Shown: piece after piece, positions 12,040 through 63,606 of the stretch | How the letters are laid out: every line of letters begins with the position of its first letter | Numbering within the stretch: position 1 is the first letter of the stretch | Sequence record: AP018399.1 | DNA length: 64,000 nt | Strand: one strand, 5' to 3' | Program-made: the position numbers and the translations under genes | Notes under the pieces: model-generated | What the model saw: the letters and a program-made list of their open reading frames with translations, nothing else | Database searches by the model: none | Told to the model about the DNA's origin: nothing

Positions 12040-12083
12040 TTGACATTATAATTTAGTTGCTGTAAAATGGATGGCAGGCCGGG
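12040..12083 (+). repeat. conserved promoter element copy 1
   Basis: TTGACA-N17-TAAAAT-GGATGGCAGGCCGGG. Confidence 0.85.
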
Positions 12084-12132
12084 ACTACAGCGCGCGGACA
12101 AAAAGAAAGGGAGCCAATCGGCCCCCTTCCTG

Positions 12133-12369
12133 TTACACTGCCCCGATGTACTTGGGGGCGGGTTCCATGTTGTGGAATCCCAGCTTGATGATGGTATGCT
12201 CTTTGTACTTGATGAAGTGGAAGATGAAGAACAGGCGGAAACAGATATCGCCTTCATCATCCACATTCCACTTGAAAAGCATGTGCGGAATGTGGTAGCG
12301 ATTCCACGCCCACCAGTATTGCAGTTTGATGCGGGCCTTGTACCACAGCGCGCGAATCTTCCAGCGCAT
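12133..12369 (-). CDS. hypothetical protein
   Basis: MRWKIRALW..., follows the 12371 ORF. Confidence 0.55.
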   Translation of the reverse strand: MRWKIRALWYKARIKLQYWWAWNRYHIPHMLFKWNVDDEGDICFRLFFIFHFIKYKEHTIIKLGFHNMEPAPKYIGAV

Positions 12370-12370
12370 G

Positions 12371-13045
12371 TTAGACCCCCATCGCTTCGCGGACTTCGGC
12401 GGGCAGCAGGGCGAAGCGTTCGGCGTTGATTGCATTGTAATCGTAACCGTCTTCCTTCGTGTCCATCCAATGCAGCATCCACATGAAGGGAGTTTTCGGC
12501 CACTTCTTGACGAATTCGCCGGTTTCCTTCATCCGGGTCAGCTTGTACACGAACGCTTCGCGGATATCGTAGTCGCCGACGAACGTGTAATCGCCGCGTT
12601 CGCCTTCGCAGCCACCGGAACAGCCGGACGGGTAGACGTTGTTTTGGTCGTTCGCCTTCCATGCGAAATAGACCTTGCCCATGTTCAGCGACGTGGTGCG
12701 GTAGGTTTCCATCGTCAGCAGGGCCGACAGTTCCGGATTCCAGTAGATGCGCTTTTCCTCGTCGCTCGGCTCTTCCGTATCGTCCCACGGATTGCCCTTG
12801 AACGCGACGGTTGCCAGCAGTTGGAAGCCCTGAGCCTCCACGATGGCGACAGCCTCGGCGAAGGTGATGTTGTAGTGCGTATCACGGGCAGCGCTGAGAG
12901 CATTGCGCTTGAGTTCGTTGTGACGCATGGCGAGAGCGAGGCCCAGCAGGTTGCTTTCCTCGGTCCGACGCTCGCCGGTCAGGCGTTCGGCCACGTCGAT
13001 GGGGTCGAAGTCGAGGATGGTTTCCAGCGTGCTATTCTGCGGCAT
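12371..13045 (-). CDS. hypothetical protein
   Basis: 224 aa, own promoter, strong codon bias. Confidence 0.85.
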   Translation of the reverse strand: MPQNSTLETILDFDPIDVAERLTGERRTEESNLLGLALAMRHNELKRNALSAARDTHYNITFAEAVAIVEAQGFQLLATVAFKGNPWDDTEEPSDEEKRIYWNPELSALLTMETYRTTSLNMGKVYFAWKANDQNNVYPSGCSGGCEGERGDYTFVGDYDIREAFVYKLTRMKETGEFVKKWPKTPFMWMLHWMDTKEDGYDYNAINAERFALLPAEVREAMGV

Positions 13046-13097
13046 TTGCCTTGTCCCGTGTGAGTGTGTGATGATTATACCGAATTAACTTGAAATG

Positions 13098-13499
13098 TCA
13101 ATCGGTCAAATCAAAATATTTCGACGTGTTGATGGTGTGCGTCTTCTTGTCGGCGTACACTGCATTGCGCAGGCCGAAATAGTAGTTGTGGAACTTCTCG
13201 TTTTGGTCGTCGCTCATGCGGTCGGTGTACTGGTTCCAATACCAGTTGACCAGCAGACAGGTGAAGGCAGCGGAGACGGTCAGGCGGTCGGCCGTCACGT
13301 CGTTGTAAGCTGCGCTCATGGTCAGTTCATCGCCATCGCACGGCAGCAGCAGGATGGTCAGGCCGTCGATGTTGGCGGTGCCCCACTGTCCACCGTTGAA
13401 GTCGCGGACCTTCTTGCGAGCCACAGCCTGAGCGTAGGCATCGAAGTGGAAGCCCTGAATCGGGTCCAGACCGAATTGCTTGATGAAGTCGATATCCAT
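13098..13499 (-). CDS. ArdB/KlcA-family antirestriction-like protein
   Basis: FNGGQW, LLLP, N..T...LTV.AA, YYFGLRN, terminal D resemble the ArdB/KlcA pattern; 133 aa. Confidence 0.6.
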   Translation of the reverse strand: MDIDFIKQFGLDPIQGFHFDAYAQAVARKKVRDFNGGQWGTANIDGLTILLLPCDGDELTMSAAYNDVTADRLTVSAAFTCLLVNWYWNQYTDRMSDDQNEKFHNYYFGLRNAVYADKKTHTINTSKYFDLTD

Positions 13500-13551
13500 G
13501 ACTGCCTCACTTCGTTGATGTGTGGTTATAATACCACACTTAAATTATATG

Positions 13552-13950
13552 TCAAGCCTCTTCGCGGAAAAGAATTCGCAGCGCGCGGGATAGCCAAAAG
13601 CCACCGACTGCGCTAGCCTTCTCCCGGTTGAACATGACTTGTCCATCCCGGAACGTCACCACGTCGTCATCCTCGCCCGTTTCGTAGGCCACGACGTAGA
13701 AGCCTGCCCGGTCAGCCTCACGGGGAAAGCGGCAGAATGAGGCCATCATTTCAAGCGAATTCCACGCGAAGACGAATTCACGGCACCACAGGCGATTGTT
13801 TACCGTCTGGTAATCGTGCGATGCGTGACCCTTGCGGGCCAATTCGGTGGGTTCCTCATGGGCCATGATGTTGTGCGAAATGCTCGGGCACTTGGAACGG
13901 CCGGTCAGCGGACCCAATCCATCCCTGTCTTCCAGTCGATAAACGAGCAT
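13552..13950 (-). CDS. hypothetical protein
   Basis: VYRLED..GLGP start; own promoter. Confidence 0.7.
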   Translation of the reverse strand: MLVYRLEDRDGLGPLTGRSKCPSISHNIMAHEEPTELARKGHASHDYQTVNNRLWCREFVFAWNSLEMMASFCRFPREADRAGFYVVAYETGEDDDVVTFRDGQVMFNREKASAVGGFWLSRALRILFREEA

Positions 13951-14016
13951 TGCATTTCCCCGTGAGTATGTGTTAAGTATACACGAAAGAAATTGAATGT
14001 CAACAATAATTTAGAC

Positions 14017-14060
14017 TTGACAGGGTTATAATTTAGGTGTAAAATGGATGGCAGGCCGGG
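14017..14060 (+). repeat. conserved promoter element copy 2
   Basis: TTGACA-N17-TAAAAT-GGATGGCAGGCCGGG. Confidence 0.85.
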
Positions 14061-14099
14061 GATGTGTATCCCATGAGAAACATTGTAAACAATAAGCAA

Positions 14100-14130
14100 C
14101 AAAAAGCCCCGACTTTCGCCGGGGCTTTTC
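14100..14130. terminator. bidirectional intrinsic terminator
   Basis: AAAAAGCCCCG-ACTTTCGC-CGGGGCTTTT. Confidence 0.8.
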
Positions 14131-14142
14131 GTGTGGTAGGGT

Positions 14143-14442
14143 TCAGGAAACCGTCTTGAGGGATTCGCGCTTGTCGATGTATCCCTTTTCGACCAGCGTA
14201 TCGAACAGGGCGCAAAGGCCGTTGTTGCGATTCTTGACGGTCATGCGACCGGGGATGTTCTGGCGAACCTGACGGTCTTGGAAGATGATGGTTTCGAAGC
14301 TGCGGACCGAACCGTCTTCACGACGCTCCACCTTGCCTTCCACGGCCATCGCGTAACCCGGACGGCCATCCGGCTTGTGGGTGTAGAGATTCCAGTGGTA
14401 GCCTTCCTGCGTGGACGGAATGTACTGGCTGTCGCTGCTCAT
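14143..14442 (-). CDS. hypothetical protein
   Basis: Own promoter. Confidence 0.7.
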   Translation of the reverse strand: MSSDSQYIPSTQEGYHWNLYTHKPDGRPGYAMAVEGKVERREDGSVRSFETIIFQDRQVRQNIPGRMTVKNRNNGLCALFDTLVEKGYIDKRESLKTVS

Positions 14443-14489
14443 CTTGTGGCCCTTGTTGGTTGGTGTGAGTTGATTATACACCTATTGTT

Positions 14490-14834
14490 TTAATTTGCAA
14501 TAGGCAATTCACCAGCCGCTTCATCCTGTCGCCACTTGGGCACCGGGACATTCTGCATTGCTTCCATGACACCACCTTCCGCACTCTTGGCTGCGGTGAT
14601 AGCATCGTGATACAGACGCTTGCCGAGGAAGTGATAGCCGTTCAGGGCTTCCGGCATGTTCTTGGTGAGTTCGTTCACGGCGAACCACATGCGGGAATTG
14701 AAATTGTCTTCCGTGAATTCGGCCTTGATGCCTTCACCGATTGCGCGGAAGATGGCGTCACGTTCGGCCGCATGGAAATGGCTCATGTGGTTGCGGATGT
14801 AGCGAGCGACCCACCAGCGAATCAGACGACGCAT
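14490..14834 (-). CDS. hypothetical protein
   Basis: MRRLIRWW start after the upstream stop. Confidence 0.65.
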   Translation of the reverse strand: MRRLIRWWVARYIRNHMSHFHAAERDAIFRAIGEGIKAEFTEDNFNSRMWFAVNELTKNMPEALNGYHFLGKRLYHDAITAAKSAEGGVMEAMQNVPVPKWRQDEAAGELPIAN

Positions 14835-14835
14835 G

Positions 14836-15039
14836 TTAGCGGCCCTTGAATGAGTTGTGTTCGGCGACGATGGTTTCCGCCAGTGCCAGCCCGTAGACGG
14901 TTGCCACAACGTCCGCTTCCGTGTCACCGTTGGGCGTGCCGTTGTCGATGCGAATCGTCCAGTTGCCATGTGCATCGGGACATTCGTCCACAATCCACTT
15001 CTTCTTGATGCGGTTGAGTTCGCTGTCGAGCTTGTTCAT
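14836..15039 (-). CDS. hypothetical protein
   Basis: Own promoter. Confidence 0.65.
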   Translation of the reverse strand: MNKLDSELNRIKKKWIVDECPDAHGNWTIRIDNGTPNGDTEADVVATVYGLALAETIVAEHNSFKGR

Positions 15040-15090
15040 GGTGGCGATTCCGTTGAGTGTGTAATAATTATACACACTCAAATGAAATTG

Positions 15091-15309
15091 TCAACCCTTC
15101 TTTTTATTTTCGTCTCGGGCTTGACGGAAGCCGCGCAGCTTGTCAAGCTTGCGCCACACGTCCCGCTGCACCAGCTTGTATTCTGGGGCGTTCAGGGCGT
15201 CGAGGCGCTGGCTCAGGTCTTCGTAGTAGCTCAGCAGTAGATTGAGGTTCGCATCACTCAATGCGTCCCCATTGTCCAGCGCTTCGTTAGCCGCTCGCAG
15301 TTTGTTCAT
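15091..15309 (-). CDS. hypothetical protein
   Basis: 72-aa ORF. Confidence 0.6.
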   Translation of the reverse strand: MNKLRAANEALDNGDALSDANLNLLLSYYEDLSQRLDALNAPEYKLVQRDVWRKLDKLRGFRQARDENKKKG

Positions 15310-15510
15310 GCGATGCGGCCTTCATAGGGATTGCCCGCCTTCCACGATTCCGGCGAACAGGTATCGGAATGGCGGGACGTGTGGTTGGTCCAGTAGACCT
15401 TGCCATCTTCCACCTTGACCAGCGTGTACGTCGAGCCACGCCACTTGACTTCGTTCGGGAGATTTTCGCTCACGGCCTTGCCTCTTTGATGATGTGTTTA
15501 TTATAACACG

Positions 15511-15804
15511 TCAAAAGTATTTGTCAATATCCTGTTGCATCTTGACAATGCCAACGGGATTGGCAGAATGGACACGGACCACAGCCGGAACGGTCGCACC
15601 TTCCAGCTTGCGCATGATGATGTATTGCAGCACGTCCCAGCCCGTCATTTCCTTGTTTCCGTAGAATGACGCGATATCGTGGTCTAGCGAAACTTCATCG
15701 TATTCGCCAGAGTCGAGCATGACGATGGCTTGATGAAAGTTGCGGGCCACGTCCCAGCCTTCGGGGCATGGCCGCAAATCATCCACGTACAGCCTGCGGC
15801 TCAT
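15511..15804 (-). CDS. cyclic-phosphate-processing receiver-domain-like protein
   Basis: LYVDDLRPCP.GW..AR, SLDHDI, VHSANPVG..M. Confidence 0.75.
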   Translation of the reverse strand: MSRRLYVDDLRPCPEGWDVARNFHQAIVMLDSGEYDEVSLDHDIASFYGNKEMTGWDVLQYIIMRKLEGATVPAVVRVHSANPVGIVKMQQDIDKYF

Positions 15805-15998
15805 TCGACTTTGCCCGTGCCGTGGCAGTAGGTGCAACGCTCTTCGTAGTTTTCCACTTTGGTAGACGGGAAATAACCCATCCCCAGCGCGGCACCCATG
15901 ATGACGCCCATCGCCATATCCGGGACAACACGGGTTTGCGTGCGGGTGCCCTTGCCGTAGCAGAAACTACAATTGCGCTTCTCTTTCTTGTCGCTCAT
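15801..15998 (-). CDS. small protein with CxxCxGxG zinc motifs
   Basis: CSFCYGKG, CTYCHGTG. Confidence 0.6.
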   Translation of the reverse strand: MSDKKEKRNCSFCYGKGTRTQTRVVPDMAMGVIMGAALGMGYFPSTKVENYEERCTYCHGTGKVE

Positions 15999-16324
15999 TA
16001 CAGCTTTTCCTTGAGTTGACGCATGATTTCCAGCGAATCATTGCGGTACAGCTTCATCGTGTGGTGAATGTCTTCCACGTCCAGCACGATGTAAAATGAA
16101 TCATCGTTGTGGTCTTCATCCCAATCAGCCACAGCGAAGTTTTCACGCGGGAAGATGATGATTGAATCATTGTCTTCACCGACGTAGAAAATGATTTGGT
16201 CGGTTGCGTCGGAATAGCCAACGCTCTCCACCAGCGTTGCACCGTTGACGATGATGGTCACGGAAGCGAGTAGCAGGGCAATCGCTCGGCCGGATTCGAT
16301 GGGGTTTGCAGGCTGGAAAGGCAT
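15998..16324 (-). CDS. hypothetical protein
   Basis: 108-aa ORF. Confidence 0.65.
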   Translation of the reverse strand: MPFQPANPIESGRAIALLLASVTIIVNGATLVESVGYSDATDQIIFYVGEDNDSIIIFPRENFAVADWDEDHNDDSFYIVLDVEDIHHTMKLYRNDSLEIMRQLKEKL

Positions 16325-16354
16325 TGTATGTTCCTTAGTTGAGAAAGGCCGGGA

Positions 16355-16468
16355 TTACTCCCAGCCCTTCTTTGCGTGCTTCTCTTTGCGCTTGTAGTCG
16401 TTCTTACGGTCGCGATGGGTAGCGGCCTTGTTGAACTTGTGGGCGTTCTTGGCGACCGGGTTGTTCAT
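16355..16468 (-). CDS. small basic DUF7230-like protein
   Basis: MNNPVAKNAHKFNKAATHRDRK..Y.RK.KH. Confidence 0.6.
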   Translation of the reverse strand: MNNPVAKNAHKFNKAATHRDRKNDYKRKEKHAKKGWE

Positions 16469-16527
16469 AGCACTAGCTCCGTAGTTGATGTGTGCTAGTA
16501 TACTTATAATTTTCCCGGTGTCAAGCG

Positions 16528-16922
16528 TTATTTGTTCGCTTCGATGATTTTTTCTGCGAACTCCACGACTTCCCACATGGCATTGCGAACTTCACCGTAT
16601 CCGGCAGAATGCCCATCATCGTATGCCTTGGAATAGCAGGCATTGAACGTGGCATCATTCAGATGGGAATGCTCGCCGCGCAGCTTTTCCTTCCAGATGC
16701 CTTCCAGCACGGAACGCTGATGGCGGTAGATGCGTTCGGCGTCCGCGTAGGCCACCATATCGCGCTCATGGGCTTCCAGTGCATCGGCATGGGCACGGAA
16801 GTCGGCCGGGTCTTGTCGCGGCCCAGCGTGGAAATGCTCGGCTTCTGCGGACGGCTCGGGTAGGGCAGTTCACGCAGGGCGGTTTCGATTTCGGCGAACG
16901 TGTTGTCGGTCGTGATGTTCAT
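16528..16922 (-). pseudogene. frameshifted hypothetical gene (about 131 aa if joined)
   Basis: Frame switches near 16806-16811 from ..GRDKT to ADFRAHADALEAHERDMVAY.. Confidence 0.6.
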
Positions 16923-16952
16923 GTGTTTATTATAGTCCCTTATCTTGAAATG

Positions 16953-17183
16953 TCAAGTGGGTTGACGTTCTTTCATGCGCTGTTGGATGATGCGCAAGCG
17001 CTGCTCTTCGGCCGTGGTCGGCGGCAGATGGTCGCGGTAGCTCTTGACCACTTCGTCAACGTGCCACGACGAAATCATGCCCTTGTCGTCCAGCTTATCG
17101 CCGTGTGCGAACTGCACGAAAGCTTCGAAGCTTTCCGGTTCCAGCAGACGGGATTCCGCGACTTTCTTGAGGTCGTGCCACAT
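16953..17183 (-). CDS. hypothetical protein
   Basis: MWHDLKK start. Confidence 0.6.
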   Translation of the reverse strand: MWHDLKKVAESRLLEPESFEAFVQFAHGDKLDDKGMISSWHVDEVVKSYRDHLPPTTAEEQRLRIIQQRMKERQPT

Positions 17184-17415
17184 GATTACTTCCCTCCGAT
17201 GAGGAACAGGGCCAGCGAACCGAGGAACCACAGCGCGGCGATGGTGGCGATGCTGTTGAACTTCGGACGGTACCAGTTGTTCTTGTAGGCTTCGACCAGC
17301 GTCAGGATGATGAGGACGATGCTGATGAGGTTCCAGAGAATCATGCGGGCCGTTCCGTAGTGGGTATGTGTGTAGAATATAGGGGTTAACTTCTCTTGTC
17401 AACCCCTATTTTCAA

Positions 17416-17681
17416 TTAAAATCCCTTCGACCAATCCTCAACGCCCAAGATTTCGAACAGGCGTTCGCGGGTGACCACTTCGATAGCCTTCATATCGCGT
17501 TCGGCCATGATTCGATTGGCCTGCCGGACCGCACCATGCATGGTCGTGTAGGCAAAGTTTTTGCGCAGGTAGGCCGCATCGAAGTCACGGGTGAAGTATC
17601 CCGGCTTATGTGATTCGCGGGCTTGCGCATCCACACATTGAACATGGGGGCATTCGGGTCAATGATGTAGAACGTGTCCAT
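17416..17681 (-). pseudogene. probably frameshifted hypothetical gene
   Basis: MDTFYIIDP..RKPANH switches near 17605-17612 to KPGYFTRDF.. Confidence 0.5.
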
Positions 17682-18201
17682 TTCGGCACCGAGTTGGAGT
17701 ATGTGTGTAAGCATACGCCATCCAATCCCGGTTGTCAAGTGCTTTACACAAATAAAAACGCCGACTAGGATTGCGCTAGTCGGCGGTGAATCTCTCAAAA
17801 CCCCTATTTCGGCAACAATCGGGGGCCGGGGTGTGCATCCCCTCTCAAATCCCTTCACGTTGAATGTATGCACCATTCAACCTATAGAAGCGCCGTCCGC
17901 TCTTCCGGGTTCACTGTCACGGCTCCGCAACGTCCCGACTTCTCTAGGGATACATTCCCTACTGTTTCGACATGCAATAAGGTCATAACTCCCTATCGTC
18001 TCACATGCCAGCGTCAGGCTTGAACAGTTGTCAATCTTTTAAATTAGTCAAAAGTTTAAGCGTCTCAAGATGAAATTAGGTCATGGTATTAGAAGGCACT
18101 ACCCTCCTTTTCACTATTTAATTTATCAGTTCACTTAGGGCCGGACTGGTTACCGGGAGAGATTGCAGGTTATCATACCTGCATCATTTGTCAAGCGGTT
18201 T

Positions 18202-18435
18202 TTACTGCTTGAAACCGTAAGCAATGAAACCGCCACGGGTGTCGCCGTCAATCTTGTCCGTGCCCACCTTGTAGGAGCGGCCAAAGATATCGAACAGTTC
18301 CGTTTCCGGGGCCAGCGTGGCAAGCTCTTCCGGAGTGATGAGGGACAGTTCGGTCCCTTCGGCCAGCACCGGTTCCCGGTCTTCGTTACCCCACTTGAAC
18401 GTCGGGTGGTTGACAGTCCACTTTGCGCGATTCAT
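18202..18435 (-). CDS. hypothetical protein
   Basis: Own promoter. Confidence 0.7.
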   Translation of the reverse strand: MNRAKWTVNHPTFKWGNEDREPVLAEGTELSLITPEELATLAPETELFDIFGRSYKVGTDKIDGDTRGGFIAYGFKQ

Positions 18436-18483
18436 TGCATATCCTTGTGTTGGTGGTTTATTATACCACGTCGAAACGGATTG

Positions 18484-18804
18484 TCAACGTCGTCCGGCAA
18501 ATGCCATTGCACGCATTGACCGCTCATCGCTCGCCCGGTTCCAATACCGGTCCTTGCAGTTGTTCCGCCCCTTGTTCGAACAGAACGCTTGCTGATACGA
18601 TTTCTTCTTGAACGTGTTGCCACAGCCCGGACACTTGCATTCGCTGCCGGTCTTGGTTGCCTTGGCGACTTCGTACAGGTTCAGGCTTCGCAGCTTGGCG
18701 ATTTCACGGGCTTTGCGTTCCCGCTCTTCCTCTTCGGCTGTCCACCCGTCTTCCAGTAGGTCAGACAGGTATTCACCTTCGCTGATTTCGTTCGGGTCAT
18801 GCAT
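18484..18804 (-). CDS. hypothetical protein with Cys cluster
   Basis: CKCPGCG..F.KK..QQAFCS..CKD.YWN. Confidence 0.7.
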   Translation of the reverse strand: MHDPNEISEGEYLSDLLEDGWTAEEEERERKAREIAKLRSLNLYEVAKATKTGSECKCPGCGNTFKKKSYQQAFCSNKGRNNCKDRYWNRASDERSMRAMAFAGRR

Positions 18805-18982
18805 TAGCGGTACTGCCTCCGGCGTAGTTCCTCGTCCAGTGCCGCCCGCCATTCCCAGCCGTAGAAGTCGCCGGTTTCGTCGCCACGGGAGAATGCGTCT
18901 TCCTTTGCCAGCTTGGCATCGGTCCATCGCCGCATGTTCTTTGCAACGCGACGGCGGTACTGCTTGCGGTCTTCGTGTGCCA

Positions 18983-19219
18983 TTAGTCGGTTTCTTCGTT
19001 GGGGTAATCGAAAAACGTACCATCATTTCCGATGGCAATAAGTTCGCTTTTCAGCGATTCATCGGGGACAAGTTCCGACAATACGGTGTCCACCGACCCA
19101 CGAATCATGTTCCCCGTGTCACACTCATCCAGAATATCCAAGAGAGTGTAATTTTCCAGCTTGTCGTCGTCGGTATGATACACGACGAATTGCAGAACGC
19201 TCTTACGCACATTACTCAT
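18983..19219 (-). CDS. hypothetical protein
   Basis: MSNVRKSV start. Confidence 0.6.
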   Translation of the reverse strand: MSNVRKSVLQFVVYHTDDDKLENYTLLDILDECDTGNMIRGSVDTVLSELVPDESLKSELIAIGNDGTFFDYPNEETD

Positions 19220-19410
19220 ACTTCTTCCTCCATTTCTTCCAGTTCTTCGGAGTCCATGTGGCAGTCGAGGCCGCACGCACGGCAACGCAGATGGGTGGTG
19301 TTGCCCAGAGTGCCCAGCAGGGTGAAGTTGTAGCTGCCGCAACCGTCGCACTGCATCGTCTTGACTCCTGATTGATTGTGTGTGAATTATAGCTCAGGTC
19401 TGGGTGGCTG

Positions 19411-20019
19411 TCAAGTCCAGCCCATCGACTTGATGAACTCGGCTTGGCGTGCTTCCGCTTCCTTACGCTTCTTGCGTTGCGCATTGAGGAAACGATTATA
19501 CTTCTGTTTCATACCCTTGACGATAGCAGCAGCATCGTGGCGAATGCTGACAGCCGTTTCCACGTCGTTGATGGTGTTGGCATAGTCGCAGCGGTGGTCC
19601 AGAGACAACGCATAGCGAACGGAATGGAACGGGATTTCGATTTTGAAAAACGCCGTGATTGCCTTGAGAACTTCCAGCGCAGTTGTACCGGACGAAATGA
19701 AGTCGTCGCAGATAATCCACACGGGCTTACGGTCGCCGAGGATGATGCGGGAATGTTCGATAGAGCTACCGTGGCTCTTTTCGTTCTTCTTGCGAACGTA
19801 CACCGTGCCAAAATCCACGGTATCGGTCTTGGTGATGAACATGCTGATAGCAGTCGCAGCAGTCGTGCCCGACATGCCACGATAAACGAGAATGGGGAAC
19901 TTGCCGTCTGCAATGAGAGCGTCAACTTCCTTGGCGATTGTCCGGCCCCATTCCGCCATGTAGTGCGGATTCATGGAGCTACCATAGTGACTCTTGCGGT
20001 TTTCGTTCAGTCGGCTCAT
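19411..20019 (-). CDS. phosphoribosyltransferase-like protein
   Basis: PRPP-loop motif WIICDDFISSGTT; RGMSG; VYVRKKNEKSHG. Confidence 0.75.
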   Translation of the reverse strand: MSRLNENRKSHYGSSMNPHYMAEWGRTIAKEVDALIADGKFPILVYRGMSGTTAATAISMFITKTDTVDFGTVYVRKKNEKSHGSSIEHSRIILGDRKPVWIICDDFISSGTTALEVLKAITAFFKIEIPFHSVRYALSLDHRCDYANTINDVETAVSIRHDAAAIVKGMKQKYNRFLNAQRKKRKEAEARQAEFIKSMGWT

Positions 20020-20119
20020 GTGTGTAGCATACCACTATAATTTACAATGTCAACACTTATTTTCTAGCTTTTTGCACTATGGACATTTCGCAAATAGCCG
20101 ATTTTTCGTCGCGTGGTTC

Positions 20120-20163
20120 CCCGGCCTCCCAGCCATTTTATTATAATTAAGTTCTCTTGTCAA
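20120..20163 (-). repeat. conserved promoter element copy 3 (variant GGCTGGGAGGCCGGG)
   Basis: TTGACA-N17-TAAAAT-GGCTGGGAGGCCGGG on minus strand. Confidence 0.8.
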
Positions 20164-20164
20164 C

Positions 20165-20206
20165 TATTGCAGACAAAGAAAAGCCCGGATATGCTCCGGG
20201 CTTTCC
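20165..20206. terminator. terminator block, 42-bp identical copy at 26200-26241
   Basis: TATTGCAGACAAAGAAAAGCCCGGATATGCTCCGGGCTTTCC. Confidence 0.85.
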
Positions 20207-20230
20207 GCATTCCCCGTTGTGGGGGTTGGG

Positions 20231-20506
20231 TTACTTGCGGGCGATGGAGAAGGCGAACCCGCCCACGTTGCCCGACACGTCCCCGGCCGTCTTCGGCAGC
20301 TTGACGCCACCGGCCAGCTTGGCAGCGCTGCGCACGCGGTCGGCGTTGATGCGGGCGGTGGTCTTCGGCGAGCGGTACAGGCCAGCACGGACCGGCTTGG
20401 CGATGCTGTCGGCGAAGGCGGCGACGCCAGCCTTGACGATGTTCTTGGCGGCTTCGAAGCTCGTGGTGTCGGTGGACTGGCCGTTGACGGTGACGTTGTA
20501 GGACAT
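20231..20506 (-). CDS. small Ala/Lys-rich basic protein
   Basis: Strong codon bias. Confidence 0.7.
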   Translation of the reverse strand: MSYNVTVNGQSTDTTSFEAAKNIVKAGVAAFADSIAKPVRAGLYRSPKTTARINADRVRSAAKLAGGVKLPKTAGDVSGNVGGFAFSIARK

Positions 20507-20686
20507 TGGCTTGATTCCTTGTGTTTGGAGTTGGTTTTGGTGGTGTGGGTTGTGCGTTACAGCACTTCGAAATCGTCGTCGTTGCCGTACATCACGGCGT
20601 CGAGGTCCGCCATGTCTTCGGCGTAGCGTTGGGCGTCGTAAGCGGAGAAATCGAACTCGTCCATTTGTTGCCTCGGTGTTGTTGGT

Positions 20687-21064
20687 TGGTATGGGTGCTA
20701 CTATACACCCTTAAATTATATTGTCAACACTTTTTTCAAATTATTTTTCTGCTTGCATGTCGCACCAGCTACCGTCAAGCGTTTTCGACGGCTTCCAGCT
20801 TCACCGTTACACCATCCTTGGTAAACACCATCGGACGGCCCGCCATCACGTTGAGTAGAATCAGGTCAACGCGGGAATCTTCCATGCCACGGCGCAGCAG
20901 CTTTTCCGCTTCATCCTTGGGGAGAACGACAACCGGCTTGCCGTAAGTGGAAAACTTGATATTCATGATGATTCCCTGTGGTATGGGTGCTACTATACCC
21001 CCTTAAATTATATTGTCAACACCTTTTTTCAAATTATTTTTCCGCTTGCATGTCGCACCAGCTA
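20687..21064. repeat. about 85-bp near-identical direct repeat flanking one gene
   Basis: 20687-20771 vs 20979-21064; contains promoter plus the 3' end of gene 21034..21258. Confidence 0.9.
20775..20966 (-). CDS. hypothetical protein
   Basis: Between the repeats, own promoter. Confidence 0.65.
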   Translation of the reverse strand: MNIKFSTYGKPVVVLPKDEAEKLLRRGMEDSRVDLILLNVMAGRPMVFTKDGVTVKLEAVENA

Positions 21065-21258
21065 ATGGCATCTTCCACGCTGGCAGCGTCATAGACCACG
21101 TTAGCCGGTTCACCAGCGAACACGACCACGCTGGGGCTGGAATAGATGGCGGTCATGCTGATGATGTAGCCGCGATACTGGAAGCCTGCACCAGCGGCCA
21201 CATGGTTGCCTTGTGCATCCATGATGCCAAAGCGCTTGGAATTGAGGTTGTCGCTCAT
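21034..21258 (-). CDS. hypothetical protein
   Basis: MSDNLNS start. Confidence 0.6.
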   Translation of the reverse strand: MSDNLNSKRFGIMDAQGNHVAAGAGFQYRGYIISMTAIYSSPSVVVFAGEPANVVYDAASVEDAISWCDMQAEK

Positions 21259-21265
21259 GGGCATA

Positions 21266-21550
21266 TCAGTAGTCTCCCGAATCGTACATGCCGTAATCTT
21301 CATCGGTTCCGAAGCCAGCGGACGCCAGTGCATAGCCGTCATCGGAATCGTCGCAGTCGATATCGTCGCAGTCGATATCTTCCTCACCTTCATCCTCATC
21401 GGACTCCGGATGCGGGACCGGCTCGCCAGTGTAAAACGGATTGGCGACCCACGTATCGGAATCATGCAACAGCCACGCCAGATGCGGGCACTCGCGGCCA
21501 ACGTTGCGGGCGAACTCGTTCAGAGCATCATTGTTGGTTGCGTAGGTCAT
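21266..21550 (-). CDS. acidic protein
   Basis: NPFY.G.P.PHPE and ALASAGFGTDEDYG motifs. Confidence 0.75.
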   Translation of the reverse strand: MTYATNNDALNEFARNVGRECPHLAWLLHDSDTWVANPFYTGEPVPHPESDEDEGEEDIDCDDIDCDDSDDGYALASAGFGTDEDYGMYDSGDY

Positions 21551-21609
21551 CGTTATGCTCCGTTGATTTGTGTGGTCATTATACACAAACAAATTCAACA
21601 TGCAAGGGG

Positions 21610-21653
21610 TTGACGTGACCTAAATTATAGTGTAAAATGGATGGCAGGCCGGG
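21610..21653 (+). repeat. conserved promoter element copy 4
   Basis: TTGACG-N17-TAAAAT-GGATGGCAGGCCGGG. Confidence 0.85.
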
Positions 21654-21711
21654 ACAGTATGCGGGGCCAACAAAAAGCCCGGATTGCTCCGGGCTTTCGA
21701 TTCTGCTAGGG

Positions 21712-22218: not shown

Positions 22219-22274
22219 CTTAATCCGTTGTGGTGTGTGGTCATTATACACACTTAAAAGAAATACGCAACTAC

Positions 22275-22318
22275 TTGCGCAAAAGAAAATTATAGTGTAA
22301 AATGGATGGCAGGCCGGG
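22275..22318 (+). repeat. conserved promoter element copy 5
   Basis: TTGCGC-N17-TAAAAT-GGATGGCAGGCCGGG. Confidence 0.8.
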
Positions 22319-22369
22319 AGAGTATGCGGGGCCAAAGAAAAGGAGCCTTGCGGCCCCTTCGCTTTTTAG

Positions 22370-22585
22370 TTAGATTGCCCATTCCAGTGCGGCATGGAGG
22401 CATTCTTTCGGCGTCCCGCACTTGATGGTGCGAATGCAGCGATTGGTGATGCTGCTGTATTCGTCCAGACCGGTGTAACCGTTGCGGCCTTGGGCTTCCA
22501 GATAGGTGACCTTCCCGCGTTCCTTGGCGACTTCGTTGATGCCCTTGAGGTCATTCCGGAGGTCTTCGCGCATGTAACGGGCCAT
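22370..22585 (-). CDS. hypothetical protein
   Basis: Own promoter. Confidence 0.7.
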   Translation of the reverse strand: MARYMREDLRNDLKGINEVAKERGKVTYLEAQGRNGYTGLDEYSSITNRCIRTIKCGTPKECLHAALEWAI

Positions 22586-23726: not shown

Positions 23727-23787
23727 TTCATTTCCTCGCCTTAACTTATGTGTCCATTATACACACTTAAATTATTTGTGCAAGGGG

Positions 23788-23830
23788 TTGACAAAAGAAA
23801 ATTATAGTGTAAAATGGATGGCAGGCCGGG
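23788..23830 (+). repeat. conserved promoter element copy 6
   Basis: TTGACA-N16-TAAAAT-GGATGGCAGGCCGGG. Confidence 0.85.
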
Positions 23831-23966
23831 ACTATAGCCCGGACAGAATGAAACCCCAGCCTTGCGACCGGGGTTTCGGAAAGGATTCGCCGTCTGTCCA
23901 GTTATTTCGCTGGCGGGTTCAACCTGTAGACATAATGCCACAGGTTGTTATACTTGTCAAGCGATT

Positions 23967-25618: not shown

Positions 25619-25697
25619 GACGGTATTCCCTTGGGGTGTGTGACCATTATACACAAACAAATGAGGGTGTCAACTACAAATTTCAATCTTTTTAGGC

Positions 25698-25740: not shown

Positions 25741-25782
25741 GATATAGCGAGGCAAAAAGAAAGGGGCCGTAGCCCCTTTCCC

Positions 25783-26049: not shown

Positions 26050-26155
26050 CGGTGTGTCTCCGTGGTTGATGTGTGTACTATACTCCCTTAAATTTATTTG
26101 TCAACACCTTTTTTCAAATATTTTTAGGGGTTGACAGGATTCGGTGGGCTAGTCT

Positions 26156-26198
26156 CCCGGCCTGCCATCCATTTTACACTTATAATTTAGAAAGTCAA
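26156..26198 (-). repeat. conserved promoter element copy 8
   Basis: TTGACT-N16-TAAAAT-GGATGGCAGGCCGGG on minus strand. Confidence 0.85.
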
Positions 26199-26244
26199 GT
26201 ATTGCAGACAAAGAAAAGCCCGGATATGCTCCGGGCTTTCCTGT

Positions 26245-30929: not shown

Positions 30930-31217
30930 TTATTTGACTTTTCCCAGCCCTTGCAATGCCAGCCACGACGTATAGAAATAGCCGTAAACGTCCGGAACAG
31001 CGAGGCTTCCCACGAAATACTGAACCAATGGAAGCTTGCCGTTGCTGTCCTTGTATAGCTCTTTACACCACGTTGACCATTCCTGCATTACCTCGACAGG
31101 CAATTGCTCAGTCAGCGGCTTGAACTGAATGAATAGATGGTATGGGATTTGTACTGGAATAACAAGTACGGGCTGCATCTTCGTTCCTTTGATGATGCCA
31201 CTATATCCAATGGACAA
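30930..31217 (-). CDS. hypothetical protein
   Basis: Downstream of promoter element copy 9. Confidence 0.5.
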   Translation of the reverse strand: MSIGYSGIIKGTKMQPVLVIPVQIPYHLFIQFKPLTEQLPVEVMQEWSTWCKELYKDSNGKLPLVQYFVGSLAVPDVYGYFYTSWLALQGLGKVK

Positions 31218-31252
31218 CCTCGTGTCAAGCGTGTATTGTGGCCGCTCAGTTC

Positions 31253-31296
31253 CCCGGCCTCCCAGCCATTTTACACTATAATTTAGAAGCTGTCAA
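31253..31296 (-). repeat. conserved promoter element copy 9 (variant)
   Basis: TTGACA-N17-TAAAAT-GGCTGGGAGGCCGGG on minus strand. Confidence 0.8.
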
Positions 31297-61704: not shown

Positions 61705-61768
61705 CATAGTAATCACATCGCTGTAATCTAACCTCACTTTCCAACCACTACCTCAAAGGTAAGCAATA

Positions 61769-62194
61769 ATGTCCCAGCCGGTTCGTTTCACCCACAACAC
61801 CCGCAACCCGCGTCTGCGCTACACCGTGGCGTACTCGTTCGAAAAGAATGCCGATGGCACCCTCGACGTGACCTACGGCATCGCACAGTGCCGCAAGGGC
61901 GACTCGTTCTCCCGTTCGGAAGGCCGCAAGATGGCCGAAGCCCGTCTCAACAAGGCTCGCAAGGGCAAGCAGGCTGCGGTGGTCGATGCCGAGTCCGGCG
62001 AAGCTCTGGTCCCGCTGTACGGCGTCCTGTCGGTGCAGGACCATGCTGGCCTGAGCGTCGGCAAGTTCGTCTCCGAGACGTTCGAAGCTGACCGCCAGAA
62101 GACGCTGGCCTACAACTCGCAGAACTCGCTGGGCGCAATCGCCGCTCAGGTGTTCGGCCCGTCGCTGTCGAAGGCTCTGGGTTTCAGCTTCTAA
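61769..62194 (+). CDS. phage hypothetical protein
   Basis: YGIAQC..GDSFSRSEGR..A..R. Confidence 0.75.
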   Translation: MSQPVRFTHNTRNPRLRYTVAYSFEKNADGTLDVTYGIAQCRKGDSFSRSEGRKMAEARLNKARKGKQAAVVDAESGEALVPLYGVLSVQDHAGLSVGKFVSETFEADRQKTLAYNSQNSLGAIAAQVFGPSLSKALGFSF

Positions 62195-62205
62195 GTAAAA
62201 AAGAA

Positions 62206-62250
62206 CCCGCGTTAGGTGTTTCGCCTCCTTGGCATCTAACGCGGGTTTCT
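62206..62250. terminator. terminator-like hairpin
   Basis: AAGAACCCGCGTTAG..CTAACGCGGGTTTCTT. Confidence 0.7.
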
Positions 62251-62290
62251 TCTTCTCAAGGGGTATTTGGTAACAAAACTGGAAACACAA

Positions 62291-62488
62291 ATGATTAACA
62301 AGAAGACCCTTTTCTTCACCCTCGTCTCTGACGGTACCCCGCACCAGTTCGAAGCTTTCAAGAGCATCATCTGCCCTTACGAAAAGAAGAAGAGATACCA
62401 GCTTGACGTGTATCGCGACATGGTGGCATTCCGCAACTCTCCCCGCGTCTACATCCTCGACAACACAGGCAATATCCTCCCGGTCTAA
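62291..62488 (+). CDS. hypothetical protein
   Basis: 65-aa ORF. Confidence 0.5.
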   Translation: MINKKTLFFTLVSDGTPHQFEAFKSIICPYEKKKRYQLDVYRDMVAFRNSPRVYILDNTGNILPV

Positions 62489-62519
62489 ATAAGACCACAC
62501 CGAATCTTAAGGGGGATAC

Positions 62520-62720
62520 ATGCTTTCGTTTCGTAACCAACTGCTACAGACCTTCGGCATCGAACGTGACTTCGCTGCCATCGTCAACTCTGACATTCAG
62601 ATTCAGCATTCCGACGAATGTGAACCGTTTGCAGAAATCGTGACTGATAAGGCCGGACACACAACCCTTAGAGTCGGGAGACTCCAACCTAACAGGGTGC
62701 CGGTCATCAAGATTCGGTAA
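62520..62720 (+). CDS. hypothetical protein
   Basis: GGGGA RBS; 66 aa. Confidence 0.5.
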   Translation: MLSFRNQLLQTFGIERDFAAIVNSDIQIQHSDECEPFAEIVTDKAGHTTLRVGRLQPNRVPVIKIR

Positions 62721-62721
62721 G

Positions 62722-63549
62722 TCAAATCTGGGATTGAACTAGGCGGTGGAATTCCTTCACCGCCTTTTTCCATTTCTGGGGATTCTTCTTAAAAACTGAC
62801 GCAAAGAACGGATAAGCCCCAGCGTTACGTCGCGGGTCAACTGCATCATAGAATGCCGATTGAATCTTCTCACGGTCTTTCACTCCACGAATCGAATTGA
62901 TAAAATCTGAGGCCGCTGTGGTAATCTGTGGTCCGAATTCTTCCTGACTGTTGTAGTACAGGTCTGAGTCTTCCTGACCAGCTAGACGTGCTGCGTTGGT
63001 ACCCGTCTGTGATGGGTGTAGCTTCCCTAGCGCAACGTCCTGAACCATGTGCTGCAACTCGTGGTCAACAATACCTTCAAGCGAGTGAAGCTGTTGTGGA
63101 ATCAAGTTAGGATTATAAACGGCTCGGTCAGGTTTCACCGACGCCACGTTGACATTGATAGCTGACGGGTCACCCTTCGACTTCTGGAAGTATTCGCCAT
63201 CGTTCGTATTACCTGCTGCTCGTGGACCAGCATAGAGCTTGAGTACGAAATCTTTTGTACGTATATTCTTTCTGTAGCGTTCCGGTAGCTCACTGGTACG
63301 GAATGCCACCTTGCCGCGTAGAGCCGGGTTGTTGCGGTCTAGGTTATGCAATTCAAAATCGCCGTACTTGGCTCGTGCATCCTGTAGAGCCTTTTCGAAC
63401 TCTGGACCCGGTTCCTCTCCGTCCACACGATACAAACGTGCTAGATGACTGAAATAGGCCGCTGCAACAATGCTCATGGCCTGTTGATACGTGGTAGGCG
63501 GAATCTGAATCTTGGACTCGGCTAGGAATTGGCGGAATGAAGTCTTCAT
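62722..63549 (-). CDS. HEXXH-containing protein, possibly virion-associated
   Basis: IVDHELQHMVQ; YYNS..EF; N-terminus MKTSFRQFLAE. Confidence 0.7.
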   Translation of the reverse strand: MKTSFRQFLAESKIQIPPTTYQQAMSIVAAAYFSHLARLYRVDGEEPGPEFEKALQDARAKYGDFELHNLDRNNPALRGKVAFRTSELPERYRKNIRTKDFVLKLYAGPRAAGNTNDGEYFQKSKGDPSAINVNVASVKPDRAVYNPNLIPQQLHSLEGIVDHELQHMVQDVALGKLHPSQTGTNAARLAGQEDSDLYYNSQEEFGPQITTAASDFINSIRGVKDREKIQSAFYDAVDPRRNAGAYPFFASVFKKNPQKWKKAVKEFHRLVQSQI

Positions 63550-63562
63550 CCCCATATTTATT

Positions 63563-63606
63563 CCCGGCCTGCCATCCATTTTACACTATAAATTATAAAG
63601 TGTCAA
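63563..63606 (-). repeat. conserved promoter element copy 10
   Basis: TTGACA-N17-TAAAAT-GGATGGCAGGCCGGG on minus strand, 14 nt before the 63549 start. Confidence 0.85.

What the first reader, a model, noticed from the sequence alone, without database searches (positions are those of the whole stretch)
12040..63606. Ten-copy promoter element with a conserved 16-nt tail; six copies fire against the gene array into terminators
Seen: TTGACN-like-N16/17-TAAAAT-GG(A/C)TGG(C/G)AGGCCGGG at 12040, 14017, 21610, 22275, 23788, 25698 (+) and 20120, 26156, 31253, 63563 (-). The + copies sit back-to-back with a gene promoter and meet a GC hairpin 30-60 nt later, predicting short non-coding transcripts that start with about AGGCCGGG. 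The ordinary promoters of the array lack this tail. Inference: a distinct promoter class. Options are a family of tiny RNAs, RNA-polymerase sinks, binding sites for a phage regulator, or primer/origin or recombination sites.
Basis: partly seen in the sequence, partly recalled or inferred. Interest (0 to 1): 0.8.

Follow-up and report, generated by a model that had tools for sequence, protein, structure and literature searches.

The report
Tailed early-promoter module of phage XacN1
A 45-bp promoter-like element with an almost invariant G-rich tail occurs 12 times in each 66-kb terminal repeat of the Xanthomonas jumbo phage XacN1 and is kept in related phages. It marks an undescribed class of early promoter that sits at gene-cassette borders in either orientation.

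Summary
All ten copies match at the stated coordinates, with none expected by chance. The window is Xanthomonas phage XacN1 (record 310001-374000) and covers most of the right 66-kb terminal repeat (DTR). The element ("S module": TTGACA, 16-17 nt, TAAAAT, GGATGGCAGGCCGGG) has 12 copies per DTR and none in the 253-kb unique region. It recurs in Xoo-sp13 (10 copies), in Stenotrophomonas phage RAS14 and in 15 metagenome contigs. At least six XacN1/Xoo-sp13 pairs lie at equivalent positions, and two pairs share a private tail variant, so single copies are under selection.

S sits at borders between gene cassettes in three arrangements:
- Seven of 12 are back-to-back with a gene promoter and aimed at a hairpin.
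- Four of 12 lie in tandem upstream of a gene promoter.
- One lies directly on a gene.

The hairpins are the minus-strand terminators of the neighbouring genes, and their T-runs in the S direction are weak.

Half of the tail lies upstream of any possible start site, so it is read as DNA. A 5' RNA hairpin, phage targets for an RNA seed and Rfam matches were not found. S cores are crossover points between relatives.

My best reading is a polymerase-loading promoter class that acts in cis at cassette borders, resembling PeSL cassettes. It is a new variant of a known kind. No transcript data exist.

The parts
12040..12083 (+). S module 1 (-35 to end of tail), antisense to the gene array; DTR position 3245-3288
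14017..14060 (+). S module 2, antisense
20120..20163 (-). S module 3, sense; tail variant GGCTGGGAGGCCGGG; lies in tandem upstream of an ordinary promoter
21610..21653 (+). S module 4, antisense
22275..22318 (+). S module 5, antisense; weak -35 (TTGCGC)
23788..23830 (+). S module 6, antisense; orthologue in Xoo-sp13 at 14854; the same core is inverted relative to the ORF042 homologue in metagenome contigs L133 and L044
25698..25740 (+). S module 7, antisense
26156..26198 (-). S module 8, sense, in tandem upstream of an ordinary promoter; orthologue in Xoo-sp13 at 18497
31253..31296 (-). S module 9, sense, at the head of the leftward array (ORF063 to ORF001), in the divergent region; tail variant GGCTGGGAGGCCGGG; orthologue in Xoo-sp13 at 21225
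63563..63606 (-). S module 10, sense; drives ORF117 directly (ATG 7 nt after the tail); orthologue in Xoo-sp13 at 58459
12009..12036 (-). ordinary promoter P back-to-back with S1 (3 nt between the -35 boxes); serves ORF010
13976..14003 (-). ordinary promoter P back-to-back with S2 (13 nt between boxes); serves ORF014
21578..21605 (-). ordinary promoter P back-to-back with S4 (4 nt between boxes); serves ORF038
22243..22270 (-). ordinary promoter P back-to-back with S5 (4 nt between boxes); serves ORF039
23756..23783 (-). ordinary promoter P back-to-back with S6 (4 nt between boxes); serves ORF042
25646..25673 (-). ordinary promoter P back-to-back with S7 (24 nt between boxes); serves ORF046
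20026..20053 (-). ordinary promoter P in tandem, 66 nt after the tail of S3; serves ORF033
26077..26104 (-). ordinary promoter P in tandem, 51 nt after the tail of S8; serves ORF047
31200..31228 (-). ordinary promoter P in tandem, 24 nt after the tail of S9; serves ORF063
12104..12131 (-). terminator hairpin of ORF011 (T-run on the minus strand), met head-on by S1 transcripts
14102..14129 (-). terminator hairpin of ORF015, met by S2 transcripts
21674..21697 (.). hairpin with an A-run before and TTTC after, met by S4 transcripts; lies after the stop of ORF039
22342..22357 (.). hairpin met by S5 transcripts; lies after the stop of ORF040
23850..23877 (.). hairpin met by S6 transcripts; conserved, loop included, in Xoo-sp13
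25759..25780 (-). terminator hairpin of ORF047, met by S7 transcripts
20178..20205 (-). terminator hairpin of ORF034, about 14 nt upstream of the -35 of S3
26213..26240 (-). identical terminator hairpin about 14 nt upstream of the -35 of S8
63617..63642 (-). hairpin followed by a T-run, just upstream of the -35 of S10

Best explanation
The element is a separate, conserved sub-class of host sigma-70-type early promoter (the 'S module'). It is specific to the long terminal repeat of XacN1-like jumbo phages of Xanthomonas and Stenotrophomonas.

Shown:
- S has a near-consensus -35 and a 16-17-nt spacer.
- Its -10 is invariant as TAAAAT.
- A 15-nt tail follows. If transcription starts at the invariant A eight bases after the -10, the tail covers -7 to +8.
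- S lies at the border between one small-gene cassette and the next, in either orientation.
- It is kept at the same positions in related phages.
- It is a crossover point between relatives.

Inferred:
- The upstream half of the tail cannot be transcribed, yet it is as invariant as the rest. The tail has also hardly changed between phages of two host genera. It is therefore read as DNA during initiation by a very conserved partner.
- That partner is most likely the host RNA polymerase itself. From established knowledge, sigma region 1.2 and the core recognition element contact non-template bases. S has G at the second base after the -10, T at -4 and G at +2, followed by a GC-rich first hybrid.
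- This would give a tightly and lastingly bound polymerase.

Mechanism I commit to: S acts in cis at cassette borders as a polymerase-loading and insulating module. Pointed at the neighbour's terminator, it backs up termination by occupancy or convergent firing. This keeps read-through out of the next gene's promoter and releases RNAs of 50-80 nt or less as by-products. Placed in tandem, it restarts transcription just after the terminator.

Because S is a 45-bp near-identical repeat, it also serves as the joint for cassette shuffling, as PeSL cassettes do in T4-type phages.
For: - Exact copies, none expected by chance.
- Promoter geometry and contrast with about 70 ordinary promoters.
- Confined to the DTR, 12 copies per repeat, none in 253 kb of unique DNA.
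- Conservation profile over 39 distinct instances: all eight G of the first four G pairs 39/39, -10 at 38-39/39, and variation at four non-G positions apart from one change at the final G.
- Same layout in Xoo-sp13 (10 copies) and RAS14.
- Orthologous pairs keep private variants (GGATGGTAGG at the rIIA border, GGGAGG near the repeat's right end).
- Position between a terminator and a gene promoter in both orientations, with a clean split into 'hairpin next' or 'promoter next'.
- Three of the six hairpins are scored as minus-strand terminators and none as a plus-strand one.
- The same S core is inverted relative to the ORF042 homologue and joined to different flanks in L133 and L044.
- No support for RNA-level readings.
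Against: - No transcript, footprint or binding data exist, so the start site itself is inferred.
- Ordinary promoters of the array are also full consensus, so tight polymerase binding alone does not set S apart.
- Positions +3 to +8, and the weaker conservation up to +14, are not explained by known polymerase contacts.
- Two sense copies (S9 and S12) sit at array heads with no upstream terminator, and S10 drives a gene directly. 'Border insulator' therefore cannot be the whole story.
- The instances were collected by similarity to the 21-mer (4 mismatches or fewer), which inflates apparent conservation of the core.
Confidence: 0.45

Rival explanations
1. The tail, with the -10 and the proximal spacer, is the operator of a sequence-specific DNA-binding regulator, phage-encoded or host. 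The regulator switches this promoter class off or on at a set time. This would resemble the phage protein TF1, which binds sites in SPO1 early promoters (own knowledge).
For: The conserved block runs from about -12 to +14 and is centred on the start site, the usual place for a repressor. The middle of the -10 (AAA) is invariant beyond what polymerase needs. The class is confined to the early region. XacN1 annotates a small 'DNA-binding protein', ORF164.
Against: The tail has no dyad symmetry. It has hardly changed between phages whose other intergenic DNA is unalignable, which fits a slowly evolving host partner better than a phage protein. Switching off antisense copies that make only short RNAs has no obvious benefit. 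No candidate regulator was identified.
Confidence: 0.2
2. The seven antisense copies per repeat encode a family of RNAs of about 50-80 nt. These share an 8-14-nt 5' end (AGGCCGGGR..AUA) and a terminal hairpin, and they act in trans as seed-sharing regulators or as decoys for a host RNA-binding protein.
For: The geometry fits: promoter, conserved 5' end, A-rich stretch, hairpin, a few U. Copy number is kept in Xoo-sp13.
Against: - Three of the six hairpins are scored as the neighbours' minus-strand terminators, none scores as a plus-strand terminator, and their U-tracts in the S direction are weak.
- The A-rich stretch is simply the complement of the neighbour's T-run.
- The body between tail and hairpin differs between orthologues.
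- No 5' hairpin is supported: mean -4.65 against -4.05 kcal/mol in shuffles, p = 0.19.
- AGGCCGGG and its complement are not enriched outside S: 9 sites on both strands together against 9.7 expected.
- There is no Rfam match.
- Untranscribed tail bases are just as conserved.
- Five copies per repeat would put the same 5' end on mRNAs.
Confidence: 0.12
3. Firing of S exposes the G-rich non-template strand, which has four G-tracts with 2-nt loops. It then forms a G-quadruplex or R-loop that primes DNA synthesis or starts recombination in the repeat. The comparison, from own knowledge, is with the Neisseria pilE G4 and its cis small-RNA promoter, and with R-loop origins of T4.
For: Variation in the tail falls almost only on non-G positions: 7 variant types there against 1 at a G, where 60% would be expected at G (binomial about 0.01, post hoc). 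A two-layer quadruplex is predicted. S cores are crossover points. Such a function would not depend on orientation.
Against: The predicted quadruplex is marginal: -1.36 kcal/mol, and G4Hunter-like scores of 1.07-1.40. The loop bases T4, A8 and C12 are conserved although a quadruplex would not need them. The downstream DNA is GC-rich with a hairpin, not an easily unwound element. Any 45-bp repeat would act as a crossover point.
Confidence: 0.08
4. S has no function of its own. It is one promoter variant that spread through the plastic early region by recombination, and the tail is a hitch-hiking leftover.
For: The region is a mosaic of promoter-gene-terminator cassettes. S and ordinary promoters share spacer motifs, which suggests common descent.
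Against: Orthologous copies, antisense ones included, are kept at the same borders in Xoo-sp13 with private variants. The tail is unchanged in a Stenotrophomonas phage. Neighbouring intergenic DNA has diverged beyond alignment.
Confidence: 0.07

Closest known systems
PeSL cassettes (promoter-early stem-loops) of T4-type phages (PMC2839356, PMC4122927)
   Same: Both are repeated sigma-70-consensus early promoters joined to stem-loop terminators. Both are concentrated in plastic regions full of small ORFan genes, and both serve as points of exchange between related phages.
   Different: PeSL promoters face the downstream gene, and their stem-loop overlaps or adjoins the promoter. S carries an extra invariant 15-nt tail and a fixed TAAAAT. 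In 7 of 12 copies it points away from the gene at the neighbour's terminator, and it coexists with the ordinary PeSL-like promoters of the same array. Mini-circles were not tested.
Early-gene clusters in terminal redundancies: SPO1 host-takeover module (PMC10531801); T5 pre-early region (own knowledge)
   Same: Both have many small genes of unknown function packed into a long terminal repeat and driven by strong host-type promoters.
   Different: To my knowledge no tailed second promoter class, and no antisense copies at cassette borders, have been reported there. The XacN1 repeat is five times longer and also carries 28 tRNA genes.
Short convergent antisense RNAs of temperate phages (lambda OOP, P22 Sar; own knowledge)
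   Same: Both have a dedicated promoter that fires against a gene and ends at a nearby hairpin after some tens of nucleotides.
   Different: Those are single-copy RNAs that overlap the target's coding or ribosome-binding region. S RNAs would overlap little more than the neighbour's terminator. S is multi-copy with a shared 5' end, and it also occurs in sense orientation.
Extended promoter elements read by RNA polymerase on the non-template strand: discriminator with sigma region 1.2, and the core recognition element (own knowledge)
   Same: S has G at the second base after the -10, T at -4 and G at +2, relative to the presumed start. These are the positions such contacts use.
   Different: Those elements span about -6 to +2 and tolerate much variation. 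The S tail is invariant up to +8 and weakly conserved to +14.
Neisseria pilE G-quadruplex with its cis small-RNA promoter (own knowledge)
   Same: In both, a promoter whose firing would expose a G-tract-rich strand lies at a site where recombination is seen.
   Different: Here the tracts are only two G long and the predicted stability is marginal. No recombination function has been shown.

Membership tests
Sigma-70-type bacterial promoter | -35 hexamer close to TTGACA, spacer of 16-18 nt, -10 hexamer TAnnnT | tested here: met
   10-11 of 12 consensus positions in nine window copies, with spacer 16 or 17. The copy at 22275 has a weak -35.
Sigma-70-type bacterial promoter | Transcription starts 6-9 nt after the -10 in the host | not testable with these tools
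   No transcript data exist. The XacN1 paper does not treat promoters.
PeSL cassette (T4-type phages) | Repeated sigma-70-consensus promoter joined to a stable stem-loop in intergenic DNA | tested here: met
   a hairpin begins 17-41 nt after the tail (antisense copies) or lies about 14 nt before the -35 (sense copies S3, S8, S10).
PeSL cassette (T4-type phages) | Promoter faces and serves the downstream ORFan gene | tested here: not met
   7 of 12 copies per repeat point against the array. Four of the five sense copies have an ordinary promoter between S and the gene.
PeSL cassette (T4-type phages) | Lies at insertion, deletion or replacement joints between related phages | tested here: met
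   L133 and L044 carry the S6 core with the upstream flank of S12 or S3 and a different downstream sequence. No statistical test against S-free borders was done.
PeSL cassette (T4-type phages) | Recombination between copies yields mini-circles | not testable with these tools
   Needs physical DNA analysis.
Cis-antisense small RNA (OOP/Sar type) | Transcript overlaps the target's coding or ribosome-binding region | tested here: not met
   hairpins lie at or beyond the neighbour's stop codon. For example, hairpin 12104-12131 lies before the ORF011 stop at 12133.
Cis-antisense small RNA (OOP/Sar type) | Efficient intrinsic terminator in the direction of the small RNA | tested here: inconclusive
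   calls no plus-strand terminator at these hairpins. Two to four T follow the stem.
Seed-sharing trans-acting small RNAs | Conserved single-stranded seed with complementary targets | tested here: inconclusive
   The 5' end is conserved. Complements are not enriched in the phage. The host genome was not available.
Known RNA families (Rfam 15) | Match to a covariance model | tested here: not met
   no match at any S copy, even at E up to 1.
Processive antitermination sites (Q-type pause site, put-type RNA) | A -10-like pause element in the first transcribed bases, or two conserved stem-loops in the nascent RNA | tested here: not met
   positions +9 to +14 show only yATAr, without the final T; no conserved 5' structure.
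G-quadruplex-forming promoter-proximal element | Four G-tracts with short loops that form a stable quadruplex | tested here: inconclusive
   Four G2-3 tracts are invariant. The predicted energy is only -1.36 kcal/mol, and G4Hunter-like scores are 1.07-1.40.
T4-type R-loop origin (promoter plus downstream unwinding element) | Easily unwound, A+T-rich stretch after the promoter | tested here: not met
   a GC-rich tail, then a GC-rich hairpin.
Stringently controlled (rRNA-type) promoter | GC-rich discriminator with non-optimal contacts, such as C at the second base after the -10, and sub-optimal core elements (own knowledge) | tested here: not met
   The discriminator is GC-rich, but the second base after the -10 is G in 39 of 39 instances and the core is near consensus.

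The most novel reading that the evidence does not exclude
S modules are programmed, orientation-independent 'polymerase-triggered' DNA sites. Host polymerase is captured at a super-stable promoter, and firing extrudes the invariant G-tract strand as a quadruplex or R-loop. That structure starts recombination or DNA synthesis inside the 66-kb repeat. It would make S the engine of cassette shuffling, and perhaps of repeat homogenisation or replication start, in these jumbo phages. A still more remote variant is that the S RNA 5' end pairs with the 3' end of tRNA-Trp, to which it is perfectly complementary over 8 nt (12 nt at DNA level) in XacN1.
Probability: 0.1. Interest if true: 0.75.

Novelty: new variant of a known kind. 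Interest (0 to 1): 0.5.

Why it matters
Jumbo phages with very long terminal repeats are poorly understood at the level of gene control. The XacN1 paper does not mention promoters, and the tail sequence occurs in no searchable paper in a phage context.

A second, tailed class of host-type promoter kept at fixed cassette borders across phages of two host genera, often pointing the 'wrong' way, says two things. The early region is organised by more than simple promoter-gene-terminator units. A 15-nt signal around the start site is also under unusually strong selection.

If the signal is read by the host polymerase, it is a natural example of extended promoter recognition that could inform promoter design for Xanthomonadaceae. 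If it is read by a regulator or acts through its RNA, it is a handle on the early-to-middle switch of this phage group.

It also extends the PeSL picture of regulatory cassettes as joints of modular shuffling to a distant group of phages.

Tried and rejected
1. 5' hairpin in the S RNA. Folding the first 30 nt of 40 instances against shuffles of the variable part gave -4.65 against -4.05 kcal/mol, Wilcoxon p = 0.19. Rejected as a family feature.

2. Seed targets in the phage. AGGCCGGG occurs 21 times on both strands, 12 of them in S itself, with 9.7 expected. There is no excess.

3. Known RNA families. None match at S, at gathering level or at E up to 1.

4. tRNA link. The reverse complement of the tail equals the last 12 nt of XacN1's own tRNA-Trp (12 of 5000 shuffled tails do as well). 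However, Xoo-sp13's tail variant matches none of its tRNAs, and its tRNA-Trp ends differently. None of the chance hits in other genomes lies on a tRNA. I treat this as probable coincidence.

5. Collection scans with an 18-mer returned mostly single chance hits; 23 hits in viral contigs is about the number expected. Only contigs with the full promoter context were kept.

6. The same 21-mer in Firmicutes prophage-like contigs has no Rfam match. It is probably chance and was not pursued.

7. Coding. The ATG inside TAAAATGG opens plus-strand ORFs of unrelated lengths and lies upstream of the presumed start. Rejected.

8. A recombination-hotspot (Chi-like) reading and a restriction-site reading were considered from memory. 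I dropped them because copy orientation is mixed near both repeat ends and the Xoo-sp13 variant changes the site.

9. Transcription-driven DNA entry was considered, because plus copies point inward from the left end. It is disfavoured because a hairpin follows within 50 nt.

10. Flanking proteins have no Pfam hits apart from two below-cutoff phosphoribosyltransferase-domain matches (PF24390, PF00156) in ORF033.

Full report
WHAT THE WINDOW IS

The window is identical to Xanthomonas phage XacN1 (AP018399.1), record positions 310001-374000. This is a 384,670-bp jumbo myovirus with 66-kb direct terminal repeats (DTR; PMC5852040). The right repeat starts at record 318796, which is window 8796. Window positions 8796-64000 therefore equal DTR positions 1-55205 and are identical to the left repeat.

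By the deposited annotation, the repeat holds three blocks:
- a leftward array of 63 small, mostly ORFan genes (DTR 0.1-22.4 kb);
- a rightward array with 28 tRNA genes (22.6-53.9 kb);
- a second leftward array, ORF117-133, which includes rIIA and rIIB (53.9-65.4 kb).

THE OBSERVATION

The 21-mer TAAAATGGMTGGSAGGCCGGG matches exactly at the ten stated places, and no match occurred in 100 shuffles. Each copy has a -35-like hexamer 16-17 nt upstream. The -35 is weak only at 22275.

The window is crowded with consensus promoters. In 11800-31500 there are 56 against 15 +/- 4 in shuffles, and my own scan of the window found 88. All the others carry TATAAT-type -10 boxes followed by A/C-rich leaders. 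None has the tail.

GENOME-WIDE DISTRIBUTION

I scanned the whole record piece by piece, allowing up to 3 mismatches. This gave the ten copies plus two variants beyond the window:
- DTR 61639 (+), between rIIA and ORF124;
- DTR 65482 (-), about 390 bp from the right end of the repeat.

Nothing was found in the 253-kb unique region. All 12 copies lie in the two leftward arrays. Seven point against the genes and five point with them.

ANATOMY

Antisense copies are back-to-back with the ordinary promoter (P) of the gene on their left. The two -35 boxes are 3-4 nt apart in four cases, 13 nt in one and 24 nt in one. These copies face a GC-rich hairpin that begins 17-41 nt after the tail.

The terminator scan scores three of those six hairpins as terminators of the minus strand, that is, of the gene on the right, with long T-runs on that strand. 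It lists none of the six as a plus-strand terminator. In the S direction only 2-4 T follow the stem. The A-rich stretch in the putative S RNA is simply the complement of the neighbour's T-run.

Sense copies follow directly after a terminator hairpin in three cases: S3, S8 and S10. Four of them (S3, S8, S9, S12) have an ordinary promoter 24-66 nt downstream. S10 is followed by the ATG of ORF117 seven bases after the tail.

Over 40 distinct instances the split is clean: a hairpin comes next, or a promoter comes next, or, for the ORF117 copy and its relatives, the gene itself. The module therefore sits between one cassette's terminator and the next cassette's promoter, in either orientation.

RELATIVES

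Xoo-sp13 (MN047793.1) shares almost no DNA with XacN1 at megablast level except these elements. It has ten copies in the same layout within its first 72 kb, six antisense and four sense. Most carry one tail change (AGGACGGG).

From the flanking homology, at least six pairs are orthologous (XacN1/Xoo-sp13):
- 15015+/14854+
- 17361-/18497-
- 22458-/21225-
- 54768-/58459-
- 61639+/64819+
- 65482-/71134-

The last two pairs share private variants in both phages (GGATGGTAGG and GGGAGG). Single copies, antisense ones included, are therefore old and individually maintained. They are not recent spreads homogenised within a genome.

Stenotrophomonas phage RAS14 has an antisense copy with the same back-to-back promoter and hairpin, plus a second variant. 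Collection scans added 15 metagenome contigs that are 70-96% identical to parts of the XacN1 repeat and carry full S modules. The many other single hits are what chance predicts for an 18-mer.

CONSERVATION PROFILE

I profiled 39 distinct instances. They were found by similarity to the 21-mer, which is a caveat. The results are:
- The -10 is TAAAAT in 38-39 of 39.
- All G of the tail are invariant, apart from one exception at the last G.
- Change is seen at four non-G positions (A3, T4, C7, C11).
- The 12 bases before the -10 and positions +9 to +14 are moderately conserved.
- Beyond that there is no conservation.

With the start at the invariant A, eight bases after the -10, the tail spans -7 to +8. 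A start cannot lie closer than about six bases to the -10. The first five tail bases are therefore never transcribed, yet they are as invariant as the rest. This is the main argument that the tail is, at least in part, a DNA signal used at initiation.

RNA-LEVEL READINGS TESTED

- The 5' 30 nt fold no better than shuffles.
- Orthologous copies differ in the body between tail and hairpin, while the hairpin, the neighbour's terminator, is conserved.
- AGGCCGGG and its complement, counted on both strands, are not enriched outside S in the phage.
- No Rfam family matches.

A family of trans-acting tiny RNAs is therefore not excluded, but it has no positive support beyond geometry.

RECOMBINATION

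Contigs L133 and L044 carry the core of XacN1 copy S6, with the same spacer variant. In both, the core points toward the ORF042 homologue instead of away from it. Its upstream flank is that of S12 in L133 and that of S3 in L044. The two contigs share a downstream leader not seen in XacN1. The homology switches at the -35 and at the end of the tail, which is the signature of crossovers inside the repeat.

Other cassette replacements and deletions between L044, L090 or L125 and XacN1 also abut S copies. I did not test this statistically against S-free borders.

This is the behaviour described for PeSL cassettes of T4-type phages (PMC2839356; PMC4122927).

MECHANISM

Shown: a conserved, repeat-restricted, promoter-shaped module at cassette borders in both orientations, with a DNA-level constraint around the start site, and its use as a crossover point.

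Inferred: the partner that reads the tail is very conserved. The tail is unchanged between phages of two host genera while neighbouring non-coding DNA is unalignable. Three of its bases sit where host polymerase contacts the non-template strand, from established knowledge of sigma region 1.2 and the core recognition element: G at the second base after the -10, T at -4 and G at +2. I therefore favour a polymerase-intrinsic extended promoter that holds polymerase tightly. I read its border position as insulation and re-loading: backing up the neighbour's terminator when convergent, and restarting transcription when in tandem. The short RNAs would be by-products. Confidence is about 0.45.

Weak points are the unexplained +3 to +14 conservation, the array-head copies without an upstream terminator, and the complete lack of transcript data.

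Rivals are an operator for a timing regulator (0.2), tiny trans-acting RNAs (0.12), quadruplex or R-loop-based priming or recombination (0.08) and a neutral spread (0.07). The quadruplex idea rests on the striking restriction of variation to non-G positions. However, the predicted two-layer structure is marginal.

COMPARISON AND NOVELTY

As a kind, this is closest to PeSL-type early promoter and terminator cassettes, and to the early-gene modules of terminal redundancies such as SPO1 (PMC10531801). It differs in four ways:
- it has the invariant tail and a fixed -10;
- it is a second class alongside the ordinary promoters;
- it often points against the genes;
- copies are conserved at orthologous positions.

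It fails the PeSL feature 'promoter serves the downstream gene' in most copies, so I do not file it as a PeSL. It works like one as a recombination joint. Neither the XacN1 paper, the papers that mention Xoo-sp13 nor a full-text search for the tail describes it. Verdict: a real feature and a new variant of a known kind, of moderate interest.

Noticed in passing
window 8796 (record 318796): This is the left boundary of the right 66-kb terminal repeat. Window 1-8795 is the end of the unique region (ORF438-459). No S copy lies there.
   Followed up: partly
window 47365-47778 (+): A full-length GOLLD RNA (Rfam RF02032, 227 bits, gathering score 150) lies in a CDS-free stretch of the repeat, between the tmRNA gene and tRNA-Gly. 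It is not annotated in the record.
   Followed up: no
window 45972-46416 (+): A phage-encoded tmRNA gene (ARAGORN tag peptide ANANTFDYALAA; Rfam beta_tmRNA and permuted tmRNA models). It has no feature in the deposited annotation of this stretch.
   Followed up: no
window 44842-45000 (+): Two tandem tRNA genes with anticodon CTA (amber suppressors; 'tRNA-Sup' in the record).
   Followed up: no
window 39077-39182 and 48060-48132 (+): Two tRNA-model matches in Rfam (45.6 and 31.3 bits) that ARAGORN does not call. The first is 106 nt long, so it may be a tRNA with an insert.
   Followed up: no
window 51463-51539 (+) compared with every S tail: The last 12 nt of the phage tRNA-Trp gene (acceptor 3' strand, discriminator G, CCA) equal the reverse complement of the S tail's TGGCAGGCCGGG. 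Only 12 of 5000 shuffled tails match any of the 28 tRNAs as well. Xoo-sp13 shows no matching change in its tRNAs.
   Followed up: partly
L011, L028, L021, L027, L032 (IMG/VR) and L180 (Thalassobacillus sp.): Firmicutes prophage-like contigs carry the same 21-mer as Xoo-sp13, followed by CAGG. In four of the six contigs it lies just after the stop of a small regulator-like gene, and some have a -35-like box 17 nt upstream. It is probably chance, given the size of the collections. No Rfam match was found.
   Followed up: partly
window 8796-64000: The repeat holds an unusually dense set of full-consensus sigma-70 promoters, roughly one per small gene. Their leaders are A/C-rich and nearly G-free up to the ribosome-binding site. 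Many spacers share an AATTTAAGTG-like motif with the S spacer.
   Followed up: partly
window 19414-20019 (-), ORF033: A weak, below-cutoff match to phosphoribosyltransferase domains (PF00156, PF24390; E about 1e-3). The other nine S-flanking proteins have no Pfam match.
   Followed up: no
window 20178-20205 and 26213-26240 (-): Two identical 28-nt terminator hairpins with the same 14-nt trailer precede S3 and S8. The unit 'terminator plus S' has therefore been duplicated as a block.
   Followed up: partly
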